Below are positions 7,620 to 63,272 of a stretch of 64,000 bases of DNA, one piece after another. Each line of letters starts with the position of its first letter. The first letter of the stretch is position 1. The stretch is taken from NCBI RefSeq assembly GCF_006345805.1, contig NC_043004.1, positions 49,910,001 through 49,974,000 on the forward strand, in the 5' to 3' direction. This DNA is from Octopus sinensis. Lineage: Eukaryota. The translations under genes and the position numbers were made by a program. The notes under the pieces were generated by a model. It was given only the letters and a program-made list of their open reading frames with translations. It ran no database searches and was not told the origin of the DNA.

Positions 7620-8741
7620 ATGCCGGGTAAAAGAAACAAGATAATTGCAAAACTGCTGACAAATCCCAGTGTAGCAACAATGCCAGAAGACGAACCGAGG
7701 AATACATATTTGGAAAACAATCACCTTACCAAGCCTGTCACGTCGAGCACTGTTGTGTCTAACTGCAGGGAGTCTATTGATATGGACCACAGGCAACCAA
7801 TAGAGTTCTCACATGAAGAAATTCTGGTGGACGTTTTAAAACCTCTACTGCATTTCACGGCGCTCTCCGGTCAAGAATTTTATCCACCAGGTTATCTCAC
7901 TAAACGCCAACAATGTTTGTGTAAAGTTTTTAAGTGTATCGTTTTACTATTTTTGGTTGTGAATATATTACGGGTATCTTTCTTATTTGACATACATGCG
8001 ACTCAAGGAAAATTTATACTCATTTTGAACTTTGTGCTGTTTTATTGTATGGAAGTTTTTAAATATATTGTAAAGTTCATCTTTAACATCGTATATGGCA
8101 GAAGATTGTTAGAGAAATTCACGGCATATTTTCCCATGACAGAACAAAAATATTTCAGGAAATTAAAACGGAACGCTAAATTATTCGTGAAGATTTCAGC
8201 TTTCGTAATAATATTGAGCATAACACTAGTAACCTCAGTGTCTGCGACTGTATTCACGGACTCTACCGTGGGATCTTTATTACATATACCAATGTGCGAG
8301 AACAAAGCTATTGAAGTGATAAACACCATATCTTTAAGCTGGTTTGTCGCTTTTGGAATATTAAGCGATACTTTACTACTTAATTTCTTTTCGAAAATAA
8401 TCTGCTGTGAGCTGCATGCCCTCTCACAAAAGCTGAAAGCGCTCGACGAGCAACAACAAACAGTGAGCGACGACCAAGAGCAAACAGTTATCAGTAAGTT
8501 CATTCATCTACAGAAGAAATACGAAGAAATAATGGAGCTACTACAACTAGTCAACGGCTACTTCTCCATTTGTATAGTCGTGACGTTCTTGTTTGCTATT
8601 CTTGTCACTTGTACGCTGATCTACATTTTGTTTCAAGCGGATGTAGTCGCTGATGAAAAACTGGTTGTCTGTTCAATGGTAGTAACGCAGGCCTTCATGG
8701 CAATCTCTATTCTCTACAGCGGTATTTCTATACAAGTTGCT
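7620..8741 (+). CDS. GRL/7TM chemoreceptor variable exon V1 (N-terminus to ~TM6); spliced isoform ~466 aa (412 aa from the ATG at 7782)
   Basis: 374-codon open frame with about six hydrophobic segments and the motifs LKPLLHFTALSGQEFYP, ICCELHALSQKLK, KYEEIMELL and LYSGISIQVA. A phase-0 GTATGT donor is at 8742. It is paralogous to V2-V4. Confidence 0.88.
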
Positions 8742-10839: not shown

Positions 10840-11107
10840 TAGGGCCCAGTGGTTAGGGCAGCGGACTCGCGGTCGTAGGATCGCGGTTTCGATTCGCAGA
10901 CCGGGAGTTGAGTGAAAACACCTAAAAGCTCCATGAGGCTCCGGCAGGGGGTGGCGATCCCTGTTGTACTCTTTCACCACTCTTTCTCCAACTCTTTCTT
11001 CTGTTGGCCTGCTCGCTTAGCCACCGAGGTGGCGTCATTCGAAGGTTAAAATAATGCGAACGCATTGTGACCAGCGATGTGTAACTACATCTGATGGACT
11101 TGTCGGT

Positions 11108-11115
<8 letters not shown>
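10840..11115 (+). mobile_element. tRNA-derived SINE
   Basis: A-box-like CAGTGGTTAGGGC and B-box-like GGTTTCGATTC, then the element body and a (TA)n tail. Confidence 0.75.
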
Positions 11116-11157
<42 letters not shown>

Positions 11158-11296
11158 TTGTATTATAACTGTATAATGTATATATATATGTGGAGGCATG
11201 TAGTTTTCCCTGTGCGAATGTAAGTGAATATATACATATATATATATGTATATATATATTATATATATATATATATATATAATATATATATATAAG

Positions 11297-11374
<78 letters not shown>

Positions 11375-11381
11375 CAATATA

Positions 11382-11438
<57 letters not shown>

Positions 11439-11879
11439 ATATTATATATATTTTATTACTGAATTTGGCGAAACTGCAGTATAAGAAAAGTTAAGTTTGT
11501 AAAAGTTTTTAATTCTCATCTCACTAAATTTATCCAGCTATTGTGTATCTAGTGCACTCTTCGCCTTGAATGTAATGATATATATATGTATAATATATGG
11601 CGTGTACTGGTACACCGGCGATTATAATTAATTTTATTGTATCGCATTTATCTTTGTTTATATATATATATATATATATATAGCATATATATAACGGGAA
11701 GCTTTATGAAAATAAACAAAAGACGAAGGCAGGTGGAAAACAAACGAACAATTGTATTAGTATGGCGCTCAGGAAATATAAATAAAACAAGTCTTTAACG
11801 TTTCGAGCCTACGCTCTTCAACAGAAAGATACACAGAAAGAAGGAGAGAAAAAAAATGCGTGCAGTAGCTAACGAATCA

Positions 11880-13203
<1,324 letters not shown>

Positions 13204-16611: not shown

Positions 16612-17688
16612 ATGCCTGGTAATAGAAACAAAATAATCGCAAAACATCTGCCGAAACCCCGAGTAGCAGCTATGAGAGAAAACGAACCAAGTAATACATG
16701 TTCACAAGGCTATAATGTAACTCCTTTTGTCATCTCTTGTACTGATGTATGTACCGGCAGTGAATCCATCAACATGAACCACAGGCGACCAATAGGGGAT
16801 TCACGTGAAGAAATACTGATGCACGTTTTAAAACCGGCATTACATTTTACGGCGCTCTCCGGTCAAGAGTTTTATCCATCAGGTTATCTCACCAAATACC
16901 AAAAGAATTTGTTCAAAGTTTTCAAAAGTATTGTTTTACTGTTTTATATTTGGAATATAATACGCTTATGTTTTTCATTTAATTTTTTGGTGAACAAAGG
17001 AACAGGTGTTGTTTTATTTAATTTCTTCCTGTTTTATTTCATAGAAATTTTAAAGCATTGTATGAAGTTCATCTTCAACATCGTATATAGCAAAAAGTTG
17101 CTTGAGAAATTCACGAATTACGATGTTTCTCTGAGTGAGCAAAACTATTTCAGGAAATTAAAAATGGAAATTAAACTGATGATAGGATTTTCGACTATCT
17201 TAATAATTGCTAATATATTACACATCGTTATTATTACTGATACACCATTTACCATCAAAACTTTACAACTTGTACCAATATGGAGGAATAGAATTTTTGA
17301 AAGGATAAACTTCGGAATTTTAAGCTGGTTTATCGCTTCTGGAATATTCAGCGACGTTATAATCTGTTGTGAGTTGCACGCCCTCTCACAAAAACTCAAA
17401 CTCCTCGACGACAAAGAAGAAACAACTAGTGACATTGACAATAAGTTGATACATCTACAAAAGAAATACGAAGAGATAATGGAGCTACTACATCAAGTCA
17501 ATACCTACTTCTCCATTTATATAGTCACCCTCCTTATGTTCGCCATTATCTTCTCCTGTATGCTTATCGTAATCTTATTTCGCCATGATGTTGTCATTAA
17601 AGAAAAAACAATATCAATTATGATCACAGCATTGCACGTTGCGTTGGCCATCACAGTCCTCTACAGTGGTATTTGTTTACAAGTTGCT
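16612..17688 (+). CDS. GRL variable exon V2; spliced isoform ~451 aa (397 aa from the ATG at 16774); carries an 8-aa in-frame deletion
   Basis: Open frame paralogous to V1 (MPGNRNK versus MPGKRNK, LKPALHFTALSGQEFYP, ICCELHALSQKLK). It ends LYSGICLQVA at a GTACGT donor (17689), with an in-frame stop 3 codons into the intron. Confidence 0.85.
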
Positions 17689-24575: not shown

Positions 24576-26483
24576 GTGTATGTGTGTATATTCCTTATGC
24601 ATTCCAAAAACCGAGTCACCAATTTTGACGTATGGAGTATCAAAAGATTCAGTAATATTTCGTTTACAAACTAAATTTTCACTCACATATTTGCATTTTT
24701 AATTATAGTTAATCTATATTCAGTTCAATTACATTTGAAGAAGTGAAGGGCGTGATTAGTGTCGTGTATATGGGATGGGAGGGCTATACGCAGGTGAGTA
24801 GGTGAGTGTGCGCGTGAGTGTATGTACCTGCACGTGTATATCTGTGTATGTGCGCGCATGAGTATGTATTTGTGTATGTCTATGAATGTATGCGATATGT
24901 GTGTATACTGATCGATATAACAGCTCTGACTTCAGCAGGATGTGTTATTTCTACTGTGCAAAGATCGCTTTCCCTCAGTTCGTTTCGAGACCCTTGACTT
25001 GATGCTAAAGTCAACATTTCAGAAGTCTTATGAAATAGTTTGTAAGTGGTGGGGTCTATACCAAGGAAAGCTTTTGTCATAATTAGTGGCTATCGTAATG
25101 TTAACTTCTATGTTATTAAAAATCTGTGATTTTCTCTGAAAGAACCTAGATTATAATTATTACATCTGCATGATATAAGCAACCTGTCATCTCGATATAA
25201 TCCAAAATTATTGTTAGTGAATTTATACGTAAGTACGTCTAGTATGTACAGGCCGACTGGACATATACATTATCATTATCATTAGTGCCAATAGAGACAT
25301 TAAATCGATCTACTGCTTCAAATTTCATGACTCAGAAAGTACTTTAAGTGATGTAATATTTAATGTAGATTATAATCGTGTACAAACTAACCGTAGCTTA
25401 AAGTTAGACTTAAGATTAGCGTTAACATGGTTTGAAACAAAACATTATCAAGGAACAGTTAGAGCCCTTCCAAAATAAACAAATTTCGAAATAAGTACTC
25501 GAGATTATAAATTCTAAAAGTCCCAGTTTTGAAGCTGGGTGATTTTCTCCAAGCATCTGATCGTCAATACATTATCTATTTATCTATAATTTACATATCA
25601 ATAATGGGTGGTACCGATAATGCGTGACAAAAGCATATGTTGTATGTGCATATCTGTATGTGTGAGTGAGCGCTGGTGTTTGTTTTGTGTGTGGGTGTGT
25701 GATATATAAGTACATGTGTAAATAGTGTCAGTACTCCATTGAGTGATTGTGCTCTTCTCCATAGCAACTGCTGAGGTTTTATGCATCATACAAGCAAAAT
25801 ATTCTATAAACCATCTTAGCATTATATTATATACATCACTTCAACGCTATTTTATTTTCACGCCATCTCAAAGCCATATCATATGCATAATCAGCCGAAC
25901 ACTATCCTACATGCAAAACCACAACATTGCATTATCCATAATGCCTGAATATCGTATTATGTACATGAACATTGGGCCAATGATCTCCGTTTCATTCTCG
26001 AATATAGCTAATCACTTCAACGTTATTCTATCTACTTTATAAAACGTCAGGTTTTGAATCCGAGTCCATTGTTTCTCTTATGCGATGTGTTACATTATTT
26101 TGTAGCCGTAACTAATAAATTGGAGCTTTTAATGTAAAAGGTATTTAATAACACCCGATTTTACAGCAATTATCAGTACAACTATAACGACCATAACAAC
26201 AGATATCCCCATCGCTACTATAATTACCGACGTTCACTACCTCTACCAACACCACTACAGCCATCACAGCCAATACATATTACTATGCCACCATTAGAGA
26301 AACATTTCAAGACACCGTAATGACGTTTGGCAAGGAAAACAATATACTCGCAAACCTCTCCCAAGTTCTGGCGTAGCAATTATAGCAGAAAACGAACCAA
26401 AGAATATATAGTCACAAACTTATAATGTAATACCATTTGTCATCTCTAGTATTGATGTATCTACATGCAGTAAATCCACCAAC

Positions 26484-27434
26484 ATGGACCATAAGCGATC
26501 AACACAAGATTCACGTGAAGAAATTCCGATAGATATTTTAAAACCTGTATTACATCTTACGGCGCTCTCTGGTCAAGACCTTTACCCGTCAGGTTATCTC
26601 ACCAAACCCCAAAAGACTTTGTTCAAAGTTTTCAAAATTATAGTTTCATTATTTTTGATTTGGAATATAATACGCTTATATTATTCATTTTATTATTGCA
26701 TCAGCGGTGGAAGAGTTATTGTCTTTTTATATTTCATGCTGTTTTATTCTTTGGAAGTTTTTAAGTATGGAATGAAGTTCATCACCAATGCCGTGTACGG
26801 CAGAAGATTGCTTAAGAAATATGCTGCATGTGCTGTTTCTCTAAGTGAGCAAAATTATTTGAGGAAAGTAAAACTGGAGATGAAATTGATGGTAGGATTT
26901 TCGACTCTCATGATAATCTTTGGTATAATATGTATCGTAATTTCTTTCTCTAATACTGATATTGCAACATCTTCCGTGAGAGCTTTACTAGTTATGCCTT
27001 TTTGGCAGAATAAAGCTTTGGAAAATACAAACTTCGTGATGTTAAGCTGGTTTATCGCTTCTGGAATACTCAGCGACGATATACTACTTTATTTCTTTTC
27101 GAAAAGTATCTGTTGTGAGCTGCACGCCCTCTCACAAAAACTGAAGCTGCTCCACGAGGAAGAACAATCAACTAGCGACCTTAACAGTAAATTGATTCAC
27201 ATTCAGGTGAAATACGAAGAGATAATGGAGCTATTGCATCATGTCAATGCCAACTTCTCCGGCTATACAATCACCATCTTCATGTGCGCTATTATTTTCT
27301 CGTGTCTGCTGATCCTTGTCGCATTTCAAGAGGACGTCAGCGGGAAAGAAATAATCATTGCAGCATTCTACACATTATTGAACATTGGGTTGGCCATCTC
27401 AGTCCTCTACAGCGGAATATCGATACAACTTGCT
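26484..27434 (+). CDS. GRL variable exon V3; spliced isoform ~409 aa
   Basis: 317-codon intact frame from MDHKRST to LYSGISIQLA, with a good Kozak context (caacATGG). A GTATGT donor is at 27435, and an in-frame stop follows immediately in the intron. Confidence 0.88.
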
Positions 27435-27604
27435 GTATGTTGATAACTTTATTTACATGCACTCATATATATATATATAAACAAAATCGAACACGCTTAT
27501 ACGGTGGGGGGGGGGTTAGTTCTGGGCATGTTCGTTCGATTTTGTTTATATACCTCGAAATGTTTCTAATTCACTTATGTTGTGTGTATATATATATTTA
27601 TATT

Positions 27605-27636
<32 letters not shown>

Positions 27637-27800
27637 CACACGCACACACATGCTAACTGCAATAAAAGTGGATTTCAATAATTCATATCTTTACAGATAT
27701 TGAAAGTACTTATTTTGGAGTTTAGTGCACAACGTGGATAATTATTTAAATTTAATTGGGAAAACAGTTAATCTATATTCAGTTCAATTACATTGAAACT

Positions 27801-27982
27801 TGTTATGTCGCACGTTCGAGGGGGGGGCTTCTACTCAACACTACTCTACTCTGACCGCTACTCAACTCTTCTCTCCACTCTGCACTACTGCCCTACTGTG
27901 CTGCTCCTGACGTCTAGACTTCTCCCTCTATATCTACGTATTGGGCTAGTCTACTTCATCGTCTGGGGGCGTCCACACAACA
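27801..27982. mobile_element. 182-bp solo LTR
   Basis: TGTT..AACA termini flanked by a perfect 5-bp target-site duplication AAACT (27796-27800 and 27983-27987). Confidence 0.8.
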
Positions 27983-28928
27983 AAACTCTATATTCGTATA
28001 TTCAAAATTCACGTCTGTTTTCCGTCTCGTATGATGTTCCAGAACCGTATAATCTATCTCAGCTGTAATTCCAGTAAAAGCAGCTTTAAAACGCTATTTA
28101 AATTCTGAAATGTTCCTAAGACAAGTATATCCTTGATTTGATATATTACTCTAGAAAGGAGTTAGGCATTGGTCGAAAAATCAAAGATTTCCGGCACAAA
28201 AACTACTATTTTAGCATATCAAGAAATCTTTCAGAATTGAAATTTAAGGGGTCAACAAAAAAAGAAACAAAACAAAAAAGCAACAAAAGAAAACCACTCT
28301 AGCTATCTAGTCTAACTAATCCGTACCTTTCACACATCCACACGTTCATTTACATGGTTACCGATATGCAAAGCGGCGGTTTATACCCATTTCTCCTGCC
28401 CAGTATTCACTTTTTAAGTAGAACCTAATGGTTTTTCCAACTCAGCCCTTTATGCTTCAAAAGACTTTTATAGTAGCACGACCCATTTCATTTTCCTTTA
28501 CTTTTGATATTTGACTTGTATTTACTGTCCTGTTTGTGTCTCTACCAGGCAGTTTTGTGTTCTTCGTAGAAGTATTAACTTCTTTATTCTATTATCTACA
28601 CCGGTTTTCCACGGTAGCGTTTAACCACTAATGTTCATCGTTCCCTTCTTGACATCATCCTCGATCACGATGAGCGCTTGGCTCTTCTCACTCTTTGCAA
28701 AATTAGTAGCATCTTTGATTTCTGATTTTTGCCTGCGTTAACCGCTTCTTCGTCTTTCATTATACTTTCTAGCTGATCCATATACGACTGACAAGGAACA
28801 AGAGCGAATGATTTTATTTAAGTCTAATTTGGAATATTCTTATACTCAATAATGCATCAAGACTTTTTTTCTCAATCTACTTACATATCTCTCTCTCTCT
28901 TATCTCTCTCTCTTTCTATATATATAGA

Positions 28929-28983
<55 letters not shown>

Positions 28984-29024
28984 TATATGATACAATATAA
29001 TATATTATAATATATGTAAATATA

Positions 29025-29070
<46 letters not shown>

Positions 29071-29084
29071 TTTTTTTTAATCCA

Positions 29085-29371
29085 AACGGGAAACAAAAAA
29101 AAAACAACAATGGAACAATTACAGTATTATTATTAATAGGCGCTCAGAAAAAGGAAGCAGGGAGGTATGACGTTTCGAGCGGAGCTCTTCGTCGGAAACA
29201 TAAAGAAGGAAGAGAGAGGAAAGAAAGATCCCAGAGAGCGGGCAACAGGGAAGAAAGAAAAAAGACGACTGGTGTTTACGAGTTGCACATGGTGAAGGCG
29301 GATGTTTACGAAAACAGAGCAAAGTGGGTTTTTAAAGGCAAAAGAGTGGAGGACAAGGTTGGTAACGCAAC

Positions 29372-29416
<45 letters not shown>

Positions 29417-29423
29417 CATACAT

Positions 29424-29512
<89 letters not shown>

Positions 29513-31240
29513 TATATATGTATGTAGGTATGTATGTATGTATGTATGTATGTATTGAAGTATTCTCAAAAAGAAGTAGGCCTCACTATATCAGATATAT
29601 AGGATAGTTCATTTAATTATTTCAATAATTGTGTGTGTATATGTACGTGTGTGTGTGTGTGTATGTGTGCGTGCATATATAGATAAAATGAAATATTAAA
29701 AATTATAATAAAATAAAGTTGATATAAAATGGCGCAATTAAAAACAAAAATGAAATAAAGTTGCTTTGTTGCAGGAGGCTGTAGGGACAGTCATTAGGAG
29801 GAGGGGGTGGTGTTTAGTTCGAAATGGATAGTTGCTCATAGATGAAATATAACGCTGTTCCAGGCGGAATCGCGAGTGTGTGGCTGCGTGGTGCAGAGCG
29901 AGGCCATAGACGGAGATGTTAGAGGGGGACTGGTTGGCCAAGCGGAAGTGACGGGTGACGGGGGTGTTCAAACGTAGCCGATTATCCCTTAGATGTTCGA
30001 TGAACCGGTCGGCCAGCCGGTGGACCGTCCGACCTACATATACTTTACCAGAGGTTGCATCTAATACAGTATATGAGGCTAGAAGAGGTACAAGCGAAGG
30101 AATCTGTGATGTGAAGAGTGTGCTAGTTAGAAGCAGTGAGGGAGGTAGTGTTGGTGATGAAGGGGCAGGTGTGGCAGCGGGATCTGGAGCGCGGGAAGGA
30201 TCCGGATGGGGCTGGGGGAAGAGGTGAAGGTGCTACGGACCAGTAGATTGCGTAAGTTCCGAGCGCGTTTAAAGGACAAAGGTGGGTTGGGGGAAAATGA
30301 GGCTGGTGGTGGGATCGAGCTGGAGACGACGGAAGGCCCGTAGGATCCTCCGATGAGGGGGAAGGGTGGAGCGGTGGAAAAGGAGGGGAAAGGGGGTGCG
30401 ATTAGGGGACTTGTGTGGGGAAGGAGGGAGGGCGGTGGTGCGATCGATTCGACGAGCGCGGACAAGGGCGGTTTGGACAAGGATTGGTGGGTATCCTCGA
30501 TGCATGAGCAGGCAGGCAAGGTACTGGGACTGGGTCTCGAAGTCCTGGTCCCGGCTGCACAAGCGTCGGAGGCGGAGGAACTTGGGGTATGGGATGGCCC
30601 GTTTGGTGTGGAAGGGATGGGAGGAGGAGTATAGAGGTGGAAATCTGTGGGTTTGAAGAAGGCGGTGGTGGTGCGAGAGTGGGAAAGGAGGTCAATGGTA
30701 AGAGAGATATCAAGTTCACCGACGAGTTAGAGATGGTAGAAGTAAACTGGAGAGAGGGGTGGAAGTTAGAGAGGAAAGAGATGAAGTGGCAGAGTTGTTC
30801 ACGGGAGAGGGAGATGGCACCTATACAGTCGTCTATGCAGCAACCGTATAGCTCTGGGGTTGGTCCGGAAAATTGGGAGAATACTTGCGCCTCAATGTGA
30901 CCAACATATAGGTCGGCGAAATTGGGGCCCATTCTCGTTCCCATCGTGACCTCAGACCCCTTTGGTAGGCTTCCCCGGCGAACGTAAAGCAGTTGAGGGT
31001 GTGGACGAGCTCTGCCAGACGGAGAAGGGTAGAAGTGCTGGGTGCTGGGTGTGCAGGGCGACGGTCGAGGTAGTATTAGAGGGCTAAGTGACCGTCGTTG
31101 TGGGGAATCACCGTGTATAAGGATTTGATGTTGAAGATGCAGAGGTGTGAGGAGCCGGAAGGGAAGGAAAAGAAATTGAAGAAGTGAAGGGCGTGATTAC
31201 TGTCGTGTATATGGGATGGGAGGGCTATACGCAGGTGAGT
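29085..31240 (-). mobile_element. 5'-truncated, frameshifted Penelope-like retroelement (RT plus GIY-YIG plus pLTR)
   Basis: Minus-strand RT motifs NIKSLYTVIPH, MGTRMGPNFADLYVG and CIDDCIG. A GIY-YIG-like YVGRTVHRLADRFIEHL lies near 29980-30035. The 3' repeat region at 29085-29365 contains a hammerhead-like motif. Confidence 0.85.
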
Positions 31241-32926
31241 AGGTGAGTGTGCGCGTGAGTGTATGTACCTGCACGTGTACATCTGTGTATGTGCGCGCAT
31301 GAGTATGTATTTGTGTATGTCTATGAATGTATGCGATATGTGTGTATACTGATCGATATAACAGCTCTGACTTCAGCAGGATGTGTTATTTCTACTGTGC
31401 AAAGATCGCTTTCCCTCAGTTCGTTTCGAGACCCTTGACTTGATGCTAAAGTCAACATCTCAGAAGTCTTATGAAATAGTTTGTAAGTGGTGGGGTCTAT
31501 ACCAAGGAAAGCTTTTGTCATAATTAGTGGCTATCGTAATGTTAACTTCTATGTTATTAAAAATCTGTGATTTTCTCTGAAAGAACCTAGATTATAATTA
31601 TTACATCTGCATGATATAAGCAACCTGTCATCTCGATATAATCCAAAATTATTGTTAGTGAATTTATACGTAAGTACGTCTAGTATGTACAGGCCGACTG
31701 GACATATACATTATCACTGTCATTAGTGCCAATAGAGACATTAAATCGATCTACTGCTTCAAATTTCATGACTCAGAAAGTACTTTAAGTGATGTAATAT
31801 TTAATGTAGATTATAATCGTGTACAAACTAACCGTAAGTCTTAAAGTTAGACTTAAGATTAGCGTTAACATGGTTTGAAAGAAAACATTATCAAGGAACA
31901 GTTAGAGCCCTTCCAAAATAAACAAATTTCGAAATAAGTACTCGAGATTATAAATTCTAAAAGTCCCAGTTTTGAAGCTGGGTGATTTTCTCCAAGCATC
32001 TGATTGTCAATACATTATCTATTTATCTATAATTTACATATCAATAATGGGTGGTACCGATAATGCGTGACAAAAGCATATGTTGTATGTGCATATCTGT
32101 ATGTGTGAGTGAGCGCTGGTGTTTGTTTTGTGTGTGGGTGTGTAATATATAAGTACATGTGTAAATAGTGTCAGTACTCCATTGAGTGATTGTGCTCTCC
32201 TCCATAGCAACTGCTGAGGTTTTATGCATCATACAAGCAAAATATTCTATAAACCATCTCAGCATTATATTATATACATCACTTCAACACTATTTTATTT
32301 TCACGCCATCTCAAAGCCATATCATATGCATAATCAGCCGAACACTATCCTACATGCAAAACCACAACATTGCATTATCCATAATGCCTGAATATCATAT
32401 TATATACATGAACATTGGGCCAATGATCTCCGTTTCATTCTCGAATATAGCTCATCACTGCAACGTTATTCTATCTACTTTATAAAACGTCAGGTTTTGA
32501 ATCAGAGTCCATTGTTTCTCTTATGCGATGTGTTACATTATTTTGTAGCCGTAACTAATAAATTGGAGCTTTTAATGTAAAAAAGTATTTAATAACACCC
32601 GATTTTACAGCAATTATCAGTACAACTATAACGACCATAACAACAGATATCCCCATCGCTACTATAATTACCGACGTTCACTACCTCTACCAACACCACT
32701 ACAGCCATCACAGCCAAAACATATTACTATGCCACCATTAGAGAAACATTTCAAGACACTGTAATGACGTTTGGCAAGGAAAACAATATACTCGCAAACC
32801 TCTCCCAAGTTCTGGCGTAGCAATTATAGCAGAAAACGAACCAAAGAATATATAGTCACAAACTTATAATGTAATACCATTTGTCATCTCTAGTATTGAT
32901 GTATCTACATGCAGTAAATCCACCAC

Positions 32927-33876
32927 ATGGACCATAAGCGATCAACACAAGATTCACGTGAAGAAATTCCGATAGATATTTTAAAACCTGTATTACATCT
33001 TACGGCGGCGCTCTGGTCAAGACCTTTACCCGTCAGGTTATCTCAACCAAACCCCAAAAGACTTTGTTCAAAGTTTTCAAAATTATAGTTTCATTATTTT
33101 TGATTTGGAATATAATACGCTTATATTATTCATTTTATTATTGGATGAGCGGTGGAAAAGTTATTATCTTTTTATATTTCATGCTGTTTTATTCTTTGGA
33201 AGTTTTTAAGTATGGAATGAAGTTCATCACCAATGCCGTGTACGGCAGAAGATTGCTTAAGAAATATGCTGCATGTGCTGTTTCTCTAAGTGAGCAAAAT
33301 TATTTGAGGAAAGTAAAACTGGAGATGAAATTGATGGTAGGATTTTCGACTATCGTGATAGTCGTTGTTATATGTATCATAATCTATTTCTGTAATACTG
33401 ATTTTGCAACATCTTTCGTGAGAGCTTTACCAGCTGTGCCTTTTTGGCAGAATAAAGTTTTTGAAAATATAAACTTCGTGATGTTAAGCTGGTTTATCGC
33501 TTCTGGAATACTCAGCGACGATATACTACTTTATTTCTTTTCGAAAAGTATCTGTTGTGAGCTGCACGCCCTCTCACAAAAACTGAAGCTGCTCCACGAG
33601 GAAGAACAATCAACTAGCGACCTTAACAGTAAATTGATTCACATTCAGGAGAAATACGAAGAGATAATGGAGCTATTGCATCATGCCAATGCCAACTTCT
33701 CCGGCTATACAATCATCATCTTCATGTGCGCTATTATTTTTTCGTGTCTGCTGATCCTTGTCGCATTTCAAGAGGGCGTCAACGGGAGAGAAAAAACCAT
33801 TGCGGCATTCAACACATTATTGCACATTGGGTTGGCCATCTCAGTCCTCTACAGCGGAATATCGATACAACTTGCT
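32927..33876 (+). pseudogene. GRL variable exon V4, frameshifted near the 5' end (pseudo-exon or sequence error)
   Basis: About 95% identical to V3. Two +1 insertions (~33007 and ~33046) put the ATG at 32927 out of frame with the 271-codon ORF 33064-33876. The GTATGT donor at 33877 is intact. Confidence 0.75.
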
Positions 33877-34199
33877 GTATGTTGATAACTTTATTTACAT
33901 GCACTCATATATATATATAAACAAAATCGAACACGCTTATACAGGGGGGGGGGTTAGTTCTGCGTATGTTCGTTCGATTTTGTTTATATATCTGAAACTG
34001 TTTCTAATTCACTTGTGTGTCTGTATATATATATATATATATAATGATATATATATATATGTGTGTGTGTATGTATGTATGTATGTATGTATGTATGTAT
34101 GTATGTATGTATGTATGTATATGTATGTATGTATGTATGTACTGGATGTATAAATTCGTTCATACATTTTTCCCTATATTTTAGTCGTTATTTTTCAGC

Positions 34200-36607: not shown

Positions 36608-36707
36608 NNNNNNNNNNNNNNNNNNNNNNNNNNNNNNNNNNNNNNNNNNNNNNNNNNNNNNNNNNNNNNNNNNNNNNNNNNNNNNNNNNNNNNNNNNNNN
36701 NNNNNNN
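36608..36707. other. Assembly gap (100 N)
   Basis: Read directly from the sequence. A round 100-N run usually means the true size is unknown. Confidence 0.99.
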
Positions 36708-41323: not shown

Positions 41324-41395
41324 GTTGAAGAGCCCATTGAGTATTTATACAAACTGAGTTTCAATAAAGAGCACAGCCAAGACACAATGACAAGG
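41324..41395 (+). CDS. GRL shared (constant) exon C1: VEEPIEYLYKLSFNKEHSQDTMTR
   Basis: Polypyrimidine tract plus CAG acceptor, 72 nt phase 0-0, GTGAGT donor. It continues the Q[VL]A frame of all V exons and matches the GR post-TM6 helix pattern. Confidence 0.85.
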
Positions 41396-41935: not shown

Positions 41936-42022
41936 ATTTCTCTATTCTTCGCAAGAGTCTCCAATCCAAGCTACCTCACTGCCGCCAAAATGTTCAATAT
42001 CGACTCCTCAACAATACTTATG
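41936..42022 (+). CDS. GRL shared exon C2: ISLFFARVSNPSYLTAAKMFNIDSSTILM
   Basis: TTCTAG acceptor, 87 nt phase 0-0, GTAAGA donor. LTAAKMFNID matches the conserved GR TM7a motif (hTA.g.F.hd). Confidence 0.9.
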
Positions 42023-43049: not shown

Positions 43050-44337
43050 CGAGGGGCGTTCAATAAGTAATGCCCCTGACTCACTTCCCATAGCAGCAGA
43101 GCAACGAAACTTGGCACAGTTATTAGTTTTTTTCTACATAGGAACCACCCAGAGTTACGCATTTCTCACATCGTTTGATGCAGCTCTGAAGACCGTTTTT
43201 GTAGAAGACCCCAGCTTGGTCCTCCAACCACGACGTGACTTCAGAAATCAAGGCTGCATCATCTGGGAAACGCTTCCCTTTCAAAAACAACTTCATGGCT
43301 GGGAAGAGGTGAAAATCAAAGGGTGCAAGGTCAGGAGAGTAGGGGGGATGGGGGATGAGTTCATAGCCGCACGCCTGTGCTTCTGATCTGGCGACACGCG
43401 AGTTGTGAACCGGAGCGTTGTCCTGCAAGAGGAGGATGCCTTTGCTGATCTTGCCCCGCCTCTTGATTTTGATAGCTTCTCTTAATTTCCTCAAAAGTGA
43501 AGCATAATAGGCTCCTGTAATTGTGGCACCCTTTGCCAGGAAATCTGTCATCAATACTCCGTCCTGGTCCCAGAAGACTGTGAGCATGACCTTGCCAGCA
43601 GAGGGCTGCACCCTTGCCTTCTTTGGAGGGTGAGTCCGGTGTTTGTCCACTGCATTGACTGGGCTTTGGTCTCTGGATCATAGTGATGGACCCAGGTTTC
43701 ATCCTGTGTAATCAGTCTTTTGAAAAATTTTGACTCATCTTCTTGGCACATCTCCAAATTCATCCTCGAGCAATCGACACGTTCTTGCTTCTGGAAAGAT
43801 GTGAGCAACCTGGGAATCCATCTGGCAGACACCTTTTACATATGCAAATGGTCATGAATGATAGTTTCCACAGACCCGGTACTAATCTTGACCTCATGGG
43901 CTATTTGGCGAATAGTTATGCGTCGATCTTCCAAAATGGCAGCCTCAACACGACGGACAGATGCCTCATCAATGGCAGAAGGGGGCGACCAGATCTGGGA
44001 GCTGTTTCCACAGAGTTCCGACCATGTTTGAATTCACGATGCCAGCGTTTTACAAGGTCATATGATGGGGCATCATCACCATAAGTTACTTTCATTTCAT
44101 CAAAAGTCTCCCGTGGTGTGCGTTCTTTCAAATACAAAAACCGGATCACTGCTCGACACTCAACAGGCTCCATTTCACACTTGACTCAGTTCAAACACCT
44201 GTAAATCAGAAACCACAATTAGTTCAGAGCTGTAATTTGCCACTTAATCTATAAAGATATATATAATTGTACATGCAAAATTTCTAGATCAAATAACTGC
44301 AAGTGGGTCAGGAGCATTACTTATTGAACGCCCCTCG
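43050..44337 (-). mobile_element. Full-length (1288 bp) mariner DD34D transposon with frameshifted transposase
   Basis: 31-bp TIRs (CGAGGGGCGTTCAATAAGTAATGC[C/T]CCTGAC, 1 mismatch) and a TA TSD. Motifs WIPRLLT, DETW, DNAPVH and YSPDLAP are split across three ORFs. Confidence 0.95.
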
Positions 44338-45951: not shown

Positions 45952-46071
45952 ATATCTGGGACTCTCTTGTCCTATGGAGTAATAGTGTTCCAAACTAGTT
46001 CTGTACATCCATGTGATAAAAATATGACGGCGTTCACAGGGAATATGACCGGGAATGCTACATTTGGCTGA
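45952..46071 (+). CDS. GRL shared terminal exon C3: ISGTLLSYGVIVFQTSSVHPCDKNMTAFTGNMTGNATFG*
   Basis: Strong polypyrimidine tract plus CAG acceptor, phase 0. SYGVIVFQ matches the TYhhhhhQF TM7 signature of GR/OR/GRL proteins. TGA is at 46069-46071. Confidence 0.9.
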   Translation: MSGTLLSYGVIVFQTSSVHPCDKNMTAFTGNMTGNATFG

Positions 46072-49830: not shown

Positions 49831-50463
49831 TCACTATATATGTAGCCCGAGATGTTCGTGTACGTAAATAAGGTATTTCCCCAATATATTTCCAATTCAG
49901 TTGCTACTATAAATAAAAGAATACGAAAATATGTCTTGATACGGAAACTTTTGATAACGATGTTGATAATCGCAATCATGTCTTAACAACGTGGGATCTT
50001 TCTCTTCTTCTGAGAGAAATGAGACTGGAAGAGAGTGAGAGGGGAAGAAGTTGAGCCAATCTCAGTAAGGCACAGGTATTTTATTTATCCAGTCCGAAAG
50101 GCTGAAAGGTGAAAATGACCTCGGTATGATTTGAACTCAAAGCGCAGGCAGCAATTTATGAAAACAGGTCGCCTATTATGAATATATTATGTGCGTACAC
50201 ATAGACACATACTTACGTACATACATGCACGCATGCACACATACATGCATGCATACATACATACATACATACATACATGTGTATGTATGTACGCGTGTGT
50301 GTGTGCATGCATATATCTATCAATCTATTCATAAACACACACCTACACATACCTGCGCGCGCGTACACTGTATGTATGACTATAAAGTGACACACATACA
50401 TACATGTGCATATGTGCGTGTATGTGAGAGAGAGAAAGAGAGGAAGTGTGTGTGCATGCATAA

Positions 50464-50552
<89 letters not shown>

Positions 50553-51535
50553 CCTACCTACCTACCTACCTACCTACTTACCTATCTAATCAAAATAAGC
50601 AACAGGATATCCAGAGGTGATGCCCTATGACAGTTTCAAGCGACTCCATTTAATTGGACAATGCAATCATTATATCAATTTAAATGCAGAGCTATCCTCA
50701 GCTGCATAAATAAATGATTAGAATTTTTTTAATCAGTAGGACACATTTTTATAATTTTAAACAAAAAAAATACACACAGCTGCGCCCGTGTACACTGTAT
50801 GCATGTCTATAAATGGACGTGAAGATGGATCATCATCATCATCTTCATTATCAACATCGTAATTAAAGTGTGCAAAAAGTACAAGAGAAATTATGATAAA
50901 GAAATATTATGATAAAGAAATATGAACGAAATAATGAGCAGTGATAGAAAGGAGAGAAATGATCCTGGTTTTAGAATATATATTCCTTAAGCGAGTACTG
51001 AAAAAAGTCGAATGCTAAAATGCAGTTAAAACAGATGCAAAAGAAAAGAAGGAAATGCTATTAGTATGGTCCAAGGGAGATAACTTATTAAAAGATTCGA
51101 TTGTTATTTCCCTTGTACTATAACTGACTTTTGTGTATATGTTAGTATTGTTACGTACGAATTTTAAATTTTCTTTCGTTCCCTTTAAATTATTTCACAA
51201 ATGATTATCTTAAGAAAAGTAAGAGACTAATGAATTTGGTCAGAGTTCGTCCTTAGTTCAACAAACTTAATCAACATTGAGTTCATCAAATTTCAGTGAG
51301 ATAAGACTTATTTTTATTTAAGTAAATAGAAATCTGTAAATTTGTAAGCTTTCTTATCATTTATGGATTTCTGGTGATTGGAAAAGGGGGGGAGCTCGGT
51401 GATGAAAGAGAGAAAAAGATCATTTTCGAAAACAAATGAAACATGAACTAAATAGGGAGCCCGAATAATAATGCGACTTGCTAGAAATTGCAGCCAGAAA
51501 TCTCTCTTTTATGTCATCTCACTGTAGTAATAAAG

Positions 51536-51544
51536 GAAGAAGTA

Positions 51545-51584
<40 letters not shown>

Positions 51585-52033
51585 AAAAGAGAAAGAAAGA
51601 AGGAAGGAAGGAAAGAAAGAAAGAAAGAAGGAAGGAAAAAGAGAAAGAAAGAAAGAAAGAAAGAAGGAAGGAAAAAGAGAAAGAAAGAAAGAAAAAAGAA
51701 AGAGGGAAGGAAGGAAGGAAAGAAAGAAAGAAGGAAGGAAGGAAGAAAGGAAGGAAGGAAGGAAGGAAGGAAAGAAAGAAGGAAGGAAGAAAGGAAAGAA
51801 AGAAAGAAAGAAAGGAAGAAATAAATAAAGAAAGAAACAAAGAAAGAAGGAAATAAGGAAAAAAGAAAGAAAGAAAGAAAGAAGGAAATAAGGAAAAAAG
51901 AAAGAAAGAAAGAAAGAAAAAAGAGAAAGAAAGAAAGAAAGAAGGAAGGAAGGAAGGAAATAAATAAATAAAGAAGGAAAGAAAGAACGAAAAAAGGAAT
52001 AAGAGAAAAAAGAAAGAAGGAAGGAAGGAAGGA

Positions 52034-52069
<36 letters not shown>

Positions 52070-52495
52070 AGGAAAAAGAGAATAAATAAATAAAGAAAGA
52101 AAGAAAGAAAGAAAGAAGGAAGGAAGGAAAAAGAGAAAGAAAGAAAGAAAGAGGGAAAGAAGGAAGGAAGGAAGGAAAGAAAGAAGGAAGGAAGGAAGGA
52201 AGGAAAGAAAGAAGGAAGGAAGGAAGGAAAGAAAGAAAGAAAGAAAGAAGGAAGGAAGGAAGGAAGGAAGGAAAAAAGAAAGAAGGAAATAAGGAAAAAG
52301 AAAGAAAGAAGGAAATAAGGAAAAAAGAAAGAAAGAAAGAAGGAAGGAAGGAAAGAAGGAAGGAAATAAATAAAGAAAGAAAGAAAGAATAAGAGAAAAC
52401 AGAAAGAAGGAAGGAAGGAAGAAAGAAGAAGAAAGAAGAAAGAAGAAAGAAGAACAGAGAATAGAAAAATAAATAAAGAAAGAAGGAAGGAAGGA

Positions 52496-52547
<52 letters not shown>

Positions 52548-52897
52548 AAAGAGAAAGAAAAAGAGAAAGAAAAAAGAACAAGAAAGAAAGAAAAAAAAAA
52601 AAGAGACAGAAAGAAAGAAAGAAAGAAAGAAGAAAGAAGAAGGAAGAAAGAATGAAAGAGAAAGAAAGAAGAAAGAAAAAAAGAAAAGAAAGAAGAGAAA
52701 GAAAGAAAGAAGAAAGAAAGAAAGAACGAAAGAAGAAATGGAGACAGAAAGAAAGAAAAGGAGACAGAAAAAAGAAAGAAAGAAGAAAAAAAGAAAGAAG
52801 AAAGAAGGAAAGAAAAAAGGAAGAAAGAAAGAAGAAGGAAAAAAGAAAGAAAGAAAGAATGAATAAGAGAGAAAAAAAGAAGAAGGAAGGAAGGAAA

Positions 52898-52938
<41 letters not shown>

Positions 52939-52997
52939 AGGAAGAAGAAAAAGAAAGAAAGAAAGAAAGAAAAAAGAAAGAAAAAAGAAAGAAAAAA

Positions 52998-53038
<41 letters not shown>

Positions 53039-53062
53039 AAAGAGACAGAAAGAAAGAAGGAA

Positions 53063-53096
<34 letters not shown>

Positions 53097-53098
53097 AT
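51536..53098. repeat. (GAAA)n/(GGAA)n polypurine microsatellite
   Basis: Read directly from the sequence. It is the source of the spurious F/S/L-rich and K/E/R-rich ORFs. Confidence 0.97.
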
Positions 53099-53919
53099 AA
53101 ACACATTTGACAAATGAAATACGAGACTTTGATGCTCGTCATGGTCAAAAGTCCGTCCGCGAGACTTTCTGAATGGTAGACCTAACGAAAAGATACCTTG
53201 AATGTTTTTTCCGGTGGTGCGGTCCGCCTGATGTGCCGAATGATATGCAACGCTCTTCTCGAAAATGGCTTTCCATGCCTGCTCTGCATGGTCGTTTAAC
53301 CTGTTAGAAACGGCAGCCAAATCTTCCTTGTATCACATTTCTACTCTCGTAATTCGGAGTGTAGTTTGGGTGGCACAAATAGGACACATGCCTTGGGCGC
53401 CACTTTGAAAGGGCACGATTTTGGCCAAGATAATTTTCTAATTAAGCCATTTCTATGCGAGTTTCCACATTTTGGTTGGGTGGTAGGGAGCAATTTTGAT
53501 ACTTGCCCTGGGCGCCATTTACCCTAGCTACACCCCTGCTCGTAATAAATGAAGGACACATGGGAAAAAAAAAAGACGGGATGGCCACGGATGAAATCTT
53601 TCCACTGTTGGTTTACTTACCTCTAACAGGGGAAATGATCTCAACTCTTATGTGATATAACTCTTATGATCGCTTTGCCTGTTTTGCGTATCACATGTGA
53701 TAAACAGGACATGTTACCCTGGCATCGATGTATTCCTAATATTTTTTCAGCCACCAGTGAAACTTGAGACGTATAAAAGGTGAGATTCAGAGCGTATGAA
53801 ACAATATGGACACACACACATACATAACATGCGCACGGGAATACTCACACAGACTCATACGCATAGACAAACTCAAACACGCACACACAATGAAGCAGAG
53901 ATACACGCATTAGCACTCA

Positions 53920-54268
53920 CATTACACACACACACACATACATACATGCATACATACAGACATACATACATATATACATACATACATGCATACATACATA
54001 CACACATACATACATACACACATGCATACACACACACACACATACATACATACATACATACTACATACATACATACATACAACATACATGCATACATACA
54101 TACACACATACACACACACATACATACATACAGACAGACAGACAGAAACACACAAGCATGGACACATACACAAATACATGAATATGCAGGGTACACACAC
54201 ACACACACACACACACACAATACATACATACATACATACATACACACACTCACACACACACAATACAT

Positions 54269-54305
<37 letters not shown>

Positions 54306-54374
54306 ATACATACATACATACATACATACATACTACATACACACACACACACACACAACACACACACAATACAT

Positions 54375-54414
<40 letters not shown>

Positions 54415-62820: not shown

Positions 62821-62887
62821 GAAAAAAGGAAAGAAAAGAAGGAAGGAAGGAAGGAAGGAAGGAAGGAAGGAAGGAAGGAAGGAGGAA

Positions 62888-62920
<33 letters not shown>

Positions 62921-63133
62921 GAAGAAAGAAGAAAGAAAAAGAAAGAAAGGAAGGAAGGAAGGAAGGAAGGAAGGAAGGAAGGAAGAAAGAAAGAAAGAAA
63001 GAAAGAAGGAAGGAAGAAAGAAAGAAAGAAAGAAAAAGACAAAGAAAGAAAGAAAGAAAAAAGAAGGAAAAAGAGAAAGAAAGAAAAAGAGAAGGAAGGA
63101 AAAAGACAAAGAAAGAAAGAAGGAAGGAAAAAG

Positions 63134-63172
<39 letters not shown>

Positions 63173-63272
63173 AAAAGAGACAGGAAGAAGAAAGAAAGAA
63201 AGAAAGAAAGAAGGAAAGAAAGAAGGAAAGAAAGAAAGAAAGAAAGAAAGAAAGCAAGAAAGGAAGAAAGAA
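62821..63272. repeat. (GAAA)n/(GGAA)n microsatellite
   Basis: Read directly from the sequence. Confidence 0.97.

What the first reader, a model, noticed from the sequence alone, without database searches (positions are those of the whole stretch)
26484..33876. Strong diversifying-selection signature between the young paralogs V3 and V4, focused on the extracellular pocket
By hand count over ~270 aligned codons there are about 30 nonsynonymous and 3 synonymous substitutions plus one codon indel. The 1.75-kb upstream non-coding copies differ at only ~22 sites (~1.3%), similar to the synonymous rate. Sixteen nonsynonymous changes versus one synonymous fall in a 44-codon TM3-ECL2 stretch (26902-27033). 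The rest cluster mainly in the TM1-TM2 loop and the TM5-TM6 loop/TM6, while the predicted intracellular segments are almost identical. With GR topology (N-terminus inside), these are the ligand-facing regions. Inference: rapid ligand-specificity tuning of the variable exons, dN/dS around 3.
Basis: partly seen in the sequence, partly recalled or inferred. Interest (0 to 1): 0.8.

Follow-up and report, generated by a model that had tools for sequence, protein, structure and literature searches.

The report
Octopus taste-receptor exon pair, mosaic divergence
Two duplicated alternative first exons of an octopus gustatory-receptor-like gene differ almost only in amino acids on the outward-facing side. 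This fits selection on ligand contact, but the differences are old (shared with a sister species), the near-identical remainder comes from gene conversion, and one copy is frameshifted here.

Summary
The counts are right. V3 (26484-27434) and V4 (32927-33876) differ by 34 substitutions plus one codon indel. Of these, 31 are nonsynonymous and 4 synonymous, and 29 of 34 lie in three short tracts coding for the S1-S2 loop, outer S3 plus EL2, and EL3 plus outer S6. The 1.75-kb upstream flank differs at 1.14%. Pairwise omega is 2.1 (NG86, not significant) to 3.0-3.3 (ML, p = 0.013-0.019).

The window is Octopus sinensis LOC118764548, a 7tm_7 gustatory-receptor-like gene. It has large alternative 5' exons spliced to three shared exons, as at Drosophila Gr39a.

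"Young paralogs, rapid tuning" is only partly right:
- 22 of the 34 substitutions and the indel are shared with the O. vulgaris copies, so they predate the species split.
- All four synonymous differences fall in the outward-facing part, where pS is 5.7%, five times the flank.
- Seven sites carry species-specific states shared by all paralogs, which shows gene conversion.

The low flank divergence is therefore homogenisation, not youth. No donor paralog (V1, V2, V5) explains the tracts. V4 carries two +1 frameshifts in this assembly.

Best reading: concerted evolution, with the ligand-side patches kept divergent, probably by selection. This is a new member of a known kind, of moderate interest.

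The parts
26484..27434 (+). V3: alternative 5' exon (317 codons, ATG to GCT|GTATGT donor) encoding the N-terminus and helices S1-S6 of a gustatory-receptor-like subunit. The ORF is intact.
   Evidence: ORF; donor; NCBI 423-aa isoform starts here; weak 7tm_7 match on V exons alone, 48-58 bits on full-length isoforms.
32927..33876 (+). V4: paralogous alternative 5' exon, 96.5% identical to V3. Two +1 frameshifts break the reading frame from its ATG.
   Evidence: NCBI isoform X5 (P0002) is identical to the V4 ORF from the internal Met MSGGK.
33007..33045 (+). Positions of the two V4 frameshifts: net +1 at ACGGCG(G)C..., and +A in CTCA(A)CC. Both are absent from V3 and from O. vulgaris Vc. They are either real pseudogenisation or assembly errors.
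24735..27636 (+). V3 copy of the duplicated block: 1749-bp upstream flank, exon, and ~190 bp of intron.
   Evidence: blastn and MAFFT.
31176..34083 (+). V4 copy of the duplicated block. Its homology with the O. vulgaris units continues further upstream, to about 29372.
26697..26723 (+). Divergent patch 1 (V3 aa 72-80; V4 33142-33168): end of S1, the S1-S2 extracellular loop, and start of S2. CISGGRVIV versus WMSGGKVII.
   Evidence: helix boundaries.
26905..27030 (+). Divergent patch 2 (V3 aa 142-182; V4 33350-33472): outer turns of S3, extracellular loop 2, and first turn of S4. It holds 17 substitutions plus a codon indel.
27332..27383 (+). Divergent patch 3 (V3 aa 284-300; V4 33774-33825): the S5-S6 extracellular loop and outer turns of S6. 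EDVSGKEII...Y...N versus EGVNGREKT...N...H.
26722..26906 (+). Inter-patch segment with zero V3/V4 differences. It contains a species-specific state shared by both O. sinensis paralogs (26825), so it was homogenised by gene conversion after speciation.
27029..27207 (+). Second inter-patch segment with zero V3/V4 differences. It contains species-specific shared states at 27106-27107 (aa208 AGT versus ATA in all O. vulgaris copies and outgroups) and at 27168.
7782..8741 (+). V1 alternative exon, coordinates from the conserved MDH start. The ORF extends upstream to the ATG at 7620.
   Evidence: P0009 and P0006 are V1 isoforms.
16774..17688 (+). V2 alternative exon. It has an 8-codon deletion in S4 relative to O. 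vulgaris and O. bimaculoides, after ~17359.
41324..41395 (+). Shared exon 1 (VEEPIEYLYKLSFNKEHSQDTMTR), with acceptor ...tttcag|GTT.
41936..42022 (+). Shared exon 2 (ISLFFARVSNPSYLTAAKMFNIDSSTILM).
45952..46071 (+). Shared exon 3: S7b with the SYGVIVFQ motif, then a C-terminal tail with three N-X-T sequons and the stop codon.

Best explanation
V3 and V4 are tandemly duplicated alternative first exons of Octopus sinensis LOC118764548, a gustatory-receptor-like (7tm_7 / 7TM ion-channel fold) gene. Each large V exon encodes S1-S6 and is spliced to three shared exons that encode S7, the same layout as Drosophila Gr39a.

The exons sit in ~6-kb tandem units that evolve in concert. Short-tract gene conversion or unequal exchange between units keeps the flanks and the cytoplasmic and inner-membrane coding parts nearly identical. 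Three short tracts remain divergent: the S1-S2 loop, outer S3 plus EL2, and EL3 plus outer S6. These tracts hold 29 of the 34 substitutions, almost all amino-acid changing (omega about 2-3).

Most of these differences were fixed before O. sinensis and O. vulgaris split, with derived states in both lineages (at least 6 in V3-type, at least 13 in V4-type).

Shown here: the mosaic of ages, conversion between the paralogs, the trans-species sharing, the extracellular-side location, and the absence of an in-locus donor.

Inferred: that the patches diverged, and are kept divergent, because they shape ligand specificity (past positive selection, and selection against homogenisation).

In this assembly V4 has since acquired two frameshifts. 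In O. sinensis it is therefore either a decaying pseudo-exon or mis-assembled.
For: Identity of the locus:
- The window is 100% identical to GCA_006345805.1 CM016866.1.
- Isoforms P0001-P0009 share the constant C-terminus.
- Pfam 7tm_7 scores 48-58 bits against a cutoff of 26.6.
- The profile hits Gr64a, Gr43a, BmGr9 and OR28 structures, E down to 5e-10.
- The AF2 model (pLDDT 75.7) has only insect OR/Orco/GR chains as its top 21 PDB matches, with TM-scores (normalised by target length) of 0.60-0.75.

Topology: 7 hydrophobic segments; K+R 25 inside versus 5 outside; 3 N-X-T sequons in the C-terminal tail.

Trans-species sharing: 22 exon sites plus the indel follow the pattern sinV4 = vulVc versus sinV3 = vulVa = vulVb. 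Only 5 such sites occur in the 1749-bp flank.

Conversion:
- Species-specific states are shared by all paralogs at 26825, 27106-7, 27168, 25426, 25464 and 26208. They are four-gamete incompatible with the V3|V4 sites and lie exactly in the zero-difference inter-patch segments.
- vulVa and vulVb differ by 3.7% in the distal flank but 0.5% in the proximal flank plus exon.

Synonymous differences are concentrated in the outer part: 4/71 versus 20/1879 neutral sites elsewhere, p = 0.01. The orthologue control shows no mutational hotspot there.

N excess:
- ML omega is 3.0-3.3, p = 0.013-0.019.
- Tree-wide 47 N: 8 S, p = 0.015; fixed differences 21: 2, p = 0.025.
- Outer-half pN of 9.0% exceeds even the distal-flank divergence of 2.6% (p = 4e-6).

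No donor: patch identity to V1, V2 and V5 is 40-65%, with at most small differences between V3-type and V4-type.

Polarisation with O. bimaculoides V3 and a Logan octopod contig shows derived states in both lineages.
Against: - Omega above 1 is only nominally significant. NG86 Fisher p = 0.105, and the a-priori outer partition gives omega 1.6, p = 0.25.
- The same patches are the fastest-evolving parts of every V exon over the long term (omega 0.7-2.3). Very weak constraint plus an old coalescence could produce much of the pattern without adaptive change.
- The survival of the patches between conversion tracts could be chance, since the tracts are defined post hoc.
- Only two closely related species plus distant outgroups were available.
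- The O. bimaculoides locus has N gaps, so a hidden second copy there cannot be excluded.
- There are no expression or functional data.
Confidence: 0.6

Rival explanations
1. The duplication is truly young (~1% neutral divergence), and a burst of adaptive amino-acid substitutions in the ligand-facing regions followed it. Conversion plays no role.
For: The proximal flank differs by 1.14% while exon pN is 4.1% (p = 7e-6). ML omega is about 3. O. bimaculoides has a single V3-type exon. On the pre-speciation branch the exon gained 22 changes against 5 in the flank (p = 1e-6).
Against: Synonymous differences are also concentrated in the divergent part, five times the flank, p = 0.01. Linked positive selection cannot cause that. 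Seven sites prove conversion between the paralogs after speciation. Distal flanks are 2.6-3.7% divergent and not tree-like. The differences are not recent, because they predate the sinensis/vulgaris split.
Confidence: 0.2
2. Relaxed constraint or pseudogene decay. V4 is a dead exon (frameshifted), and the amino-acid changes are neutral decay.
For: V4 has two frameshifts in O. sinensis. On the terminal branches, sinV4 versus vulVc gives omega 0.56-0.70, not distinguishable from 1. Over the long term, the whole V3-type exon gives omega about 0.8-1.2 against O. bimaculoides.
Against: The differences are shared with O. vulgaris Vc, which has no frameshift. They are extremely clustered (p = 5e-5), which decay would not produce. 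V3-type also carries at least 6 derived changes. Patch divergence (about 14%) is far above any neutral proxy (1.1-3.7%).
Confidence: 0.07
3. The divergent tracts were pasted in by gene conversion from another, more divergent paralog. This could be a ghost or unassembled donor.
For: The pattern is tract-like, with elevated pS inside the tracts. The array is demonstrably conversion-prone. V4-type REKT matches V2 KEKT at aa 290-291. The assembly has a gap (36608-36707) and the O. bimaculoides locus has many.
Against: V1, V2 and V5 are 40-65% identical to the tracts and V4-type is at most marginally closer than V3-type. Most V4-derived states, such as Y154, F164, P169 and G284, occur in no other V exon or outgroup. 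Both lineages carry derived states. Two database searches found no closer paralog: 10-11 hits in the word-indexed search and 38 at E<=1e-3 in the exhaustive one, all either this gene or distant. A donor under normal constraint would bring more synonymous changes than 2-3 against 26 N.
Confidence: 0.1
4. Assembly artefact: the V3/V4 differences or their mosaic arise from mis-assembly or poor polishing of near-identical repeats.
For: The O. sinensis assembly has a 100-N gap 2.7 kb downstream of V4. It carries odd lesions (V2 8-codon deletion, V4 frameshifts). It has two units where O. vulgaris has three.
Against: An independent O. vulgaris assembly (GCA_951406725.2) reproduces 22 of 34 substitutions and the indel in the same arrangement.
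Confidence: 0.03

Closest known systems
Drosophila Gr39a locus (also Gr28b and Gr23a): gustatory receptor genes with several large alternative 5' exons spliced to small shared 3' exons (Gardiner et al. 2008, PMC2204066)
   Same: The architecture matches. Four or five ~950-bp alternative exons, each with its own start codon and donor and encoding most of the receptor, are joined to three small conserved exons encoding the last helix. Exon duplication, pseudogenisation and loss between species occur in both.
   Different: The host is a mollusc and the locus arose independently. PAML on Gr39a found purifying selection overall, weaker in duplicated exons. Here the pairwise omega of the duplicate pair is 2-3, and conversion between exon copies is demonstrable.
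Insect gustatory and odorant receptors of known structure (DmGr64a 8jme/8ze0, DmGr43a 8jm9, BmGr9 8vc1/8uvt, Orco 6c70, MhOR5 7lic)
   Same: The Pfam family (7tm_7) is the same. The profile matches at E = 5e-10, the predicted fold matches at TM-scores (normalised by target length) of 0.60-0.75, and the N-in/C-out 7TM topology is shared. In those structures the ligand pocket is lined by S2-S6 in the extracellular half and the S1-S2 loop contacts ligand (review PMC12635824). These are the segments where V3 and V4 differ.
   Different: Sequence identity is about 12-14%. The S7 motif is SY(x5)Q rather than TY(x5)QF. The ligand, stoichiometry and channel function of the octopus protein are unknown. 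Residue-level pocket mapping was not possible because model coordinates are not exposed.
Concerted evolution with selectively maintained divergent sites in tandem receptor duplicates (textbook cases from my own knowledge: primate L/M opsins, MHC and KIR loci)
   Same: Paralogs are homogenised by short-tract conversion, except at sites that determine specificity. Synonymous and non-coding divergence is therefore low between the patches and higher inside them.
   Different: Here the units are alternative exons of one gene rather than whole genes, and the selective maintenance is inferred rather than shown.
Octopus chemotactile receptors (CRs, nicotinic-receptor-like), with diversifying selection in the ligand pocket (reviewed in PMC11526382)
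   Same: It is an octopus chemoreceptor candidate with lineage-specific duplication and amino-acid divergence on the ligand side.
   Different: The protein family is unrelated (pentameric Cys-loop versus 7TM ion channel). The CRs are a functionally characterised, expanded family. This GR-like gene belongs to a very small family: the only close relatives found are its own isoforms and orthologues (10-11 hits at E<=1e-3 in the word-indexed search), and the exhaustive 1.84-billion-protein library yields 38 hits at E<=1e-3.

Membership tests
Gustatory receptor / GR-like (Pfam 7tm_7; 7TM ion-channel superfamily) | Significant match to the 7tm_7 family model over most of its length | tested here: met
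   Full-length isoforms score 48.5-57.7 bits against a gathering cutoff of 26.6, covering model positions 2-367 of 370. V exons alone score 18-24 bits, below the cutoff.
Gustatory receptor / GR-like (Pfam 7tm_7; 7TM ion-channel superfamily) | Sequence-profile homology to experimentally solved GR/OR proteins | tested here: met
   The 30-sequence profile A2 hits DmGr64a (E = 4.9e-10, near full length), AgamOR28, Gr43a and BmGr9. The shallow 9-sequence profile found nothing.
Gustatory receptor / GR-like (Pfam 7tm_7; 7TM ion-channel superfamily) | Fold: seven helices with long S4-S6 cytoplasmic extensions and a split S7, resembling solved OR/GR protomers | tested here: met
   The AF2 model has pLDDT 75.7 and pTM 0.73. 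The Foldseek top 21 PDB hits are all insect OR/Orco/GR, with probability 1.0 and TM-scores (normalised by target length) of 0.60-0.75, followed by a sharp drop.
Gustatory receptor / GR-like (Pfam 7tm_7; 7TM ion-channel superfamily) | Inverted topology: N-terminus cytoplasmic, C-terminus extracellular | tested here: met
   Seven hydrophobic segments; K+R 25 on the predicted inside versus 5 outside; three N-X-T sequons in the C-terminal tail. This is a prediction, not an experiment.
Gustatory receptor / GR-like (Pfam 7tm_7; 7TM ion-channel superfamily) | Conserved S7 motif TYhhhhhQF | tested here: inconclusive
   The octopus sequence is LLSYGVIVFQT, that is S-Y-x5-Q with F before rather than after Q. 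The wider alignment consensus is TYxxxxxQ.
Gustatory receptor / GR-like (Pfam 7tm_7; 7TM ion-channel superfamily) | Tetrameric ligand-gated cation channel activity | not testable with these tools
   This needs expression and electrophysiology or cryo-EM.
Alternative-first-exon GR locus (Gr39a/Gr28b type) | Several large paralogous 5' exons, each with its own ATG and splice donor, upstream of shared small 3' exons | tested here: met
   V1-V4 all end in GCT|GTA(T/C)GT donors. The shared exons lie at 41324, 41936 and 45952. NCBI isoforms in three species combine different V parts with the same C-terminus.
Alternative-first-exon GR locus (Gr39a/Gr28b type) | Transcript evidence that each V exon is used mutually exclusively | not tested
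   Only predicted (Gnomon) isoform models were available. One of them (X2, P0006) is a V1/V2 chimera.
Positive (diversifying) selection between duplicates | dN/dS significantly above 1 | tested here: inconclusive
   ML omega is 3.05-3.29, p = 0.013-0.019. NG86 gives 2.1, p = 0.105. The a-priori outer half gives 1.6, p = 0.25. Mutation counts are 47 N: 8 S, p = 0.015.
Positive (diversifying) selection between duplicates | Site or branch-site codon models on a multi-species alignment with recombination accounted for | not tested
   codeml, GARD and GENECONV were not available, and only two close species plus distant outgroups could be retrieved.
Concerted evolution by inter-paralog gene conversion | Species-specific derived states shared by paralogs, incompatible with the orthology tree | tested here: met
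   There are seven such sites, including the dinucleotide change AGT/ATA at aa208. They are four-gamete incompatible with the 27 V3|V4 sites.
   V1, V2 and V5 of both species are 40-65% identical in the tracts, with at most small differences between V3-type and V4-type.

The most novel reading that the evidence does not exclude
This octopus GR-like gene diversifies its ligand-facing surface through a cassette array of alternative first exons. Gene conversion continually homogenises the channel and cytoplasmic scaffold, while selection preserves trans-species, specificity-determining patches. That would be a mollusc counterpart of Gr39a/Gr28b that arose independently, and the first sign that cephalopods use 7TM ion-channel chemoreceptors with tunable exons alongside the nicotinic-like chemotactile receptors.
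Probability: 0.35. Interest if true: 0.55.

Novelty: new member of a known kind. Interest (0 to 1): 0.4.

Why it matters
Work on cephalopod chemosensation centres on the nicotinic-like chemotactile receptors. In the paper library I searched, I found no description of GR-like genes in octopus.

This locus shows that an octopus carries a GR-fold gene with the same alternative-first-exon layout as Drosophila Gr39a. Exon copies turn over between sister species. The copies differ almost only on the ligand side.

It is also a clean cautionary example. Low flank divergence between tandem duplicates can come from gene conversion, so comparing dN with flank divergence overstates recent positive selection.

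If the patches do set ligand specificity, swapping them between V3 and the intact O. vulgaris V4-type exon would be a direct way to find determinants of ligand choice in a non-insect 7TM ion-channel receptor.

Tried and rejected
- A Pfam scan of the V exons alone gave only sub-threshold 7tm_7 hits. Full-length isoforms were needed.
- A PDB sequence search with the shallow 9-sequence profile found nothing.
- AF2 with 9 sequences gave pLDDT 40 and was unusable except for helix positions. It was replaced by the 30-sequence run.
- A second word-indexed homolog search added only one Argonauta fragment fused to a retroelement. I did not use the third search, because no closer V3/V4-type sequences exist in that database.
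- The donor search among V1, V2 and V5 was negative. The V4 "REKT" / V2 "KEKT" match covers only two codons and the flanking sites disagree, so I treated it as parallel change or at most a micro-conversion.
- A mutational hotspot in the patches was rejected, because orthologue pS is the same inside and outside the patches.
- Deletion of V5 in O. sinensis was rejected in favour of an assembly gap.
- Residue-level mapping onto a ligand pocket was not possible, because model coordinates are not returned.

Full report
**What the region is.** The window is 100% identical to Octopus sinensis GCA_006345805.1, chromosome CM016866.1. It holds four paralogous ~950-bp ORFs:
- V1, 7782-8741
- V2, 16774-17688
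- V3, 26484-27434
- V4, 32927-33876

Each ends at a GCT|GTA(T/C)GT donor. Three small shared exons follow, at 41324-41395, 41936-42022 and 45952-46071.

Database hits are isoforms of one gene: LOC118764548 in O. sinensis/O. vulgaris and LOC106874590 in O. bimaculoides. The isoforms combine different V parts with the same C-terminus.

The evidence that this is a gustatory-receptor-like protein is as follows:
- Full-length isoforms pass Pfam 7tm_7, at 48-58 bits against a cutoff of 26.6.
- A 30-sequence profile hits the solved Gr64a, Gr43a, BmGr9 and OR28 structures, with E down to 5e-10.
- An AF2 model (pLDDT 75.7, pTM 0.73) has only insect OR/Orco/GR chains as its 21 best PDB matches.
- There are seven hydrophobic segments, K+R counts of 25 inside versus 5 outside, and three N-X-T sequons in the C-terminal tail. 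Together these give the GR topology of N-terminus in, C-terminus out.

The layout of large alternative 5' exons plus three small shared exons is that of Drosophila Gr39a (PMC2204066).

The duplicated block is 24735-27636 <-> 31176-34083.
- The 1749-bp upstream flank has 20 substitutions and 3 indels (1.14%).
- The exon has 34 substitutions and a 3-bp indel (3.5%). NG86 gives Nd = 31 and Sd = 4.
- 29 of 34 substitutions lie in three tracts totalling 205 bp: 26697-26723, 26905-27030 and 27332-27383. A maximum of 17 in 132 bp has permutation p = 5e-5.
- In the AF2 and hydropathy models these tracts are the S1-S2 loop, the outer turns of S3 plus EL2, and EL3 plus the outer turns of S6.
- With a topology-based partition, N changes are 24/265 sites in the outer half versus 7/482 elsewhere (p = 2e-6).

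Its ATG is therefore out of frame, and NCBI isoform X5 starts at an internal Met that removes S1.

**Formal dN/dS.**

| Comparison | Omega | Test |
|---|---|---|
| Pairwise, NG86 | 2.1 | Fisher p = 0.105 |
| Pairwise, codon ML (equal, F1x4, F3x4; kappa ~3.5) | 3.05-3.29 | LRT against omega = 1, p = 0.013-0.019 |
| O. vulgaris Vb versus Vc, ML (not independent: shares the internal branch) | 2.5-2.7 | p = 0.024-0.037 |
| All five V3/V4-type exons, 47 N: 8 S | ~2.3 | p = 0.015 |
| Fixed V3|V4 differences, 21 N: 2 S | ~4.1 | p = 0.025 |

The point estimate "around 3" is therefore reproduced, but significance is only nominal.

**The paralogs are not simply young.** The O. vulgaris locus (L001, GCA_951406725.2) has three units. 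Va and Vb are V3-type. Vc is V4-type, has no frameshifts, and carries a 24-nt in-frame insertion.

22 of the 34 O. sinensis V3/V4 substitutions and the codon indel are shared as sinV4 = vulVc versus sinV3 = vulVa = vulVb. They were therefore fixed before the species split. Single-copy divergence between the species is about 0.45%.

O. bimaculoides has a single V3-type exon, although its locus has N gaps. Using it and a more distant octopod contig (L003) as outgroups, both lineages carry derived states. At least 6 are in V3-type, for example C72, I73, L142, F146, L179 and S286. At least 13 are in V4-type, for example V145, Y154, F164, P169, G284, K290 and T291.

**Gene conversion shapes the pattern.** Seven sites carry a state shared by both O. 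sinensis paralogs and different from all three O. vulgaris paralogs. These are exon sites 26825, 27106-7 (aa208 AGT versus ATA, a dinucleotide change) and 27168, and flank sites 25426, 25464 and 26208.
- They are four-gamete incompatible with the 27 V3|V4 sites.
- The exon sites lie in the two inter-patch segments where V3 and V4 are identical (26722-26906 and 27029-27207).
- In O. vulgaris, Va and Vb differ by 3.7% in the distal flank but only 0.5% in the proximal flank plus exon. Distal-flank relations among units are not tree-like.

All four synonymous V3/V4 differences fall in the outer part: pS is 5.7%, against 0% in the inner part and 1.14% in the flank (p = 0.01 against all other neutral sites). 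Orthologue comparisons show equal pS inside and outside the patches, so this is not a mutational hotspot.

The patches therefore coalesce earlier than the flanks. The low flank divergence reflects homogenisation, and "dN far above the flank rate" overstates recent selection. Even so, outer-half pN (9.0%) exceeds the highest neutral proxy available, the distal flank at 2.6% (p = 4e-6).

**Alternatives.**
- Conversion from another paralog. V1, V2 and V5 are 40-65% identical in the tracts and V4-type is at most marginally closer than V3-type. Most V4-derived states occur nowhere else. No closer paralog was found in either protein library. A ghost or unassembled donor cannot be excluded.
- Pseudogene decay. 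This is rejected as the main cause, because the intact O. vulgaris Vc shares the changes and the changes are tightly clustered.
- Neutral hypervariability. The same patches are the fastest-evolving parts of all V exons over the long term (omega 0.7-2.3, versus 0.16-0.54 elsewhere). Weak constraint therefore contributes, and omega above 1 in the outer half is not significant on its own (1.6, p = 0.25).
- Assembly artefact. This can explain only the frameshifts and the copy number.

**Verdict.** Selection on ligand-facing residues is the best-supported cause, but it is not proven. The event is old rather than ongoing, the apparent youth comes from concerted evolution, and V4 is probably non-functional in this O. 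sinensis assembly. The locus is a new, mollusc member of a known kind: an alternative-first-exon GR locus, with post-duplication divergence of chemoreceptor ligand regions under concerted evolution.

Noticed in passing
window 36608-36707: This is a 100-N assembly gap. It sits exactly where O. vulgaris has about 12 kb (L001 47682-59793) that carries a fifth alternative exon, V5 (L001 57514-58464). V5 has an orthologue in O. bimaculoides (L002 19833-20783). V5 is probably unassembled in O. sinensis rather than deleted.
   Followed up: partly
window ~17359 (V2 exon 16774-17688): O. sinensis V2 lacks 8 codons (LLYFFAKI, in helix S4) that are present in O. vulgaris and O. bimaculoides V2. NCBI isoform X2 (P0006) is a V1/V2 chimera joined at about this point.
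   Followed up: partly
L001 31342-32298, 37369-38325, 43811-44788: O. vulgaris has three V3/V4-type units where the O. sinensis assembly has two. The V4-type copy (Vc) carries an in-frame 24-nt insertion (NSKLMVGF) in the cytoplasmic S4-S5 region. The insertion looks like a templated duplication of KLMVGF from S3.
   Followed up: partly
window 45952-46071 versus L004 67863-68021: NCBI's O. sinensis gene models skip the local last exon, which is orthologous to the O. vulgaris and O. bimaculoides last exon and ends in NMTGNATFG*. They use instead a diverged copy about 45 kb further downstream, beyond a TIR-domain gene on the opposite strand. This is either a second partial GR-like locus or a mis-annotation.
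   Followed up: no
window 26320-26483 and 32765-32926: V1, V2 and O. bimaculoides V3 keep an N-terminal extension of about 53 codons. Upstream of all V3/V4-type exons in O. sinensis and O. vulgaris this extension is interrupted by a stop codon and has no ATG. The last ~160 bp of the 'non-coding' flank is therefore former coding sequence.
   Followed up: partly
window 43123-43650 (-), 4926-5441 (+), 60484-61107 (-), 30127-30944 (-): Transposon debris: a mariner-type transposase fragment (Pfam Transposase_1, E = 2e-20) in the intron between shared exons 2 and 3; a Pif1 2B-domain fragment; and a DUF7041 ORF. There is also a GC-rich ORF with no Pfam hit that forms part of the tandem V3/V4 unit in both species.
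   Followed up: partly
window 10900-13200 and 50200-55900, 62800-63500: Very long AT-rich microsatellite and low-complexity arrays. GC falls to 18% at 12-14 kb, and strand skew is strong at 52-56 kb. They produce many spurious long ORFs.
   Followed up: no
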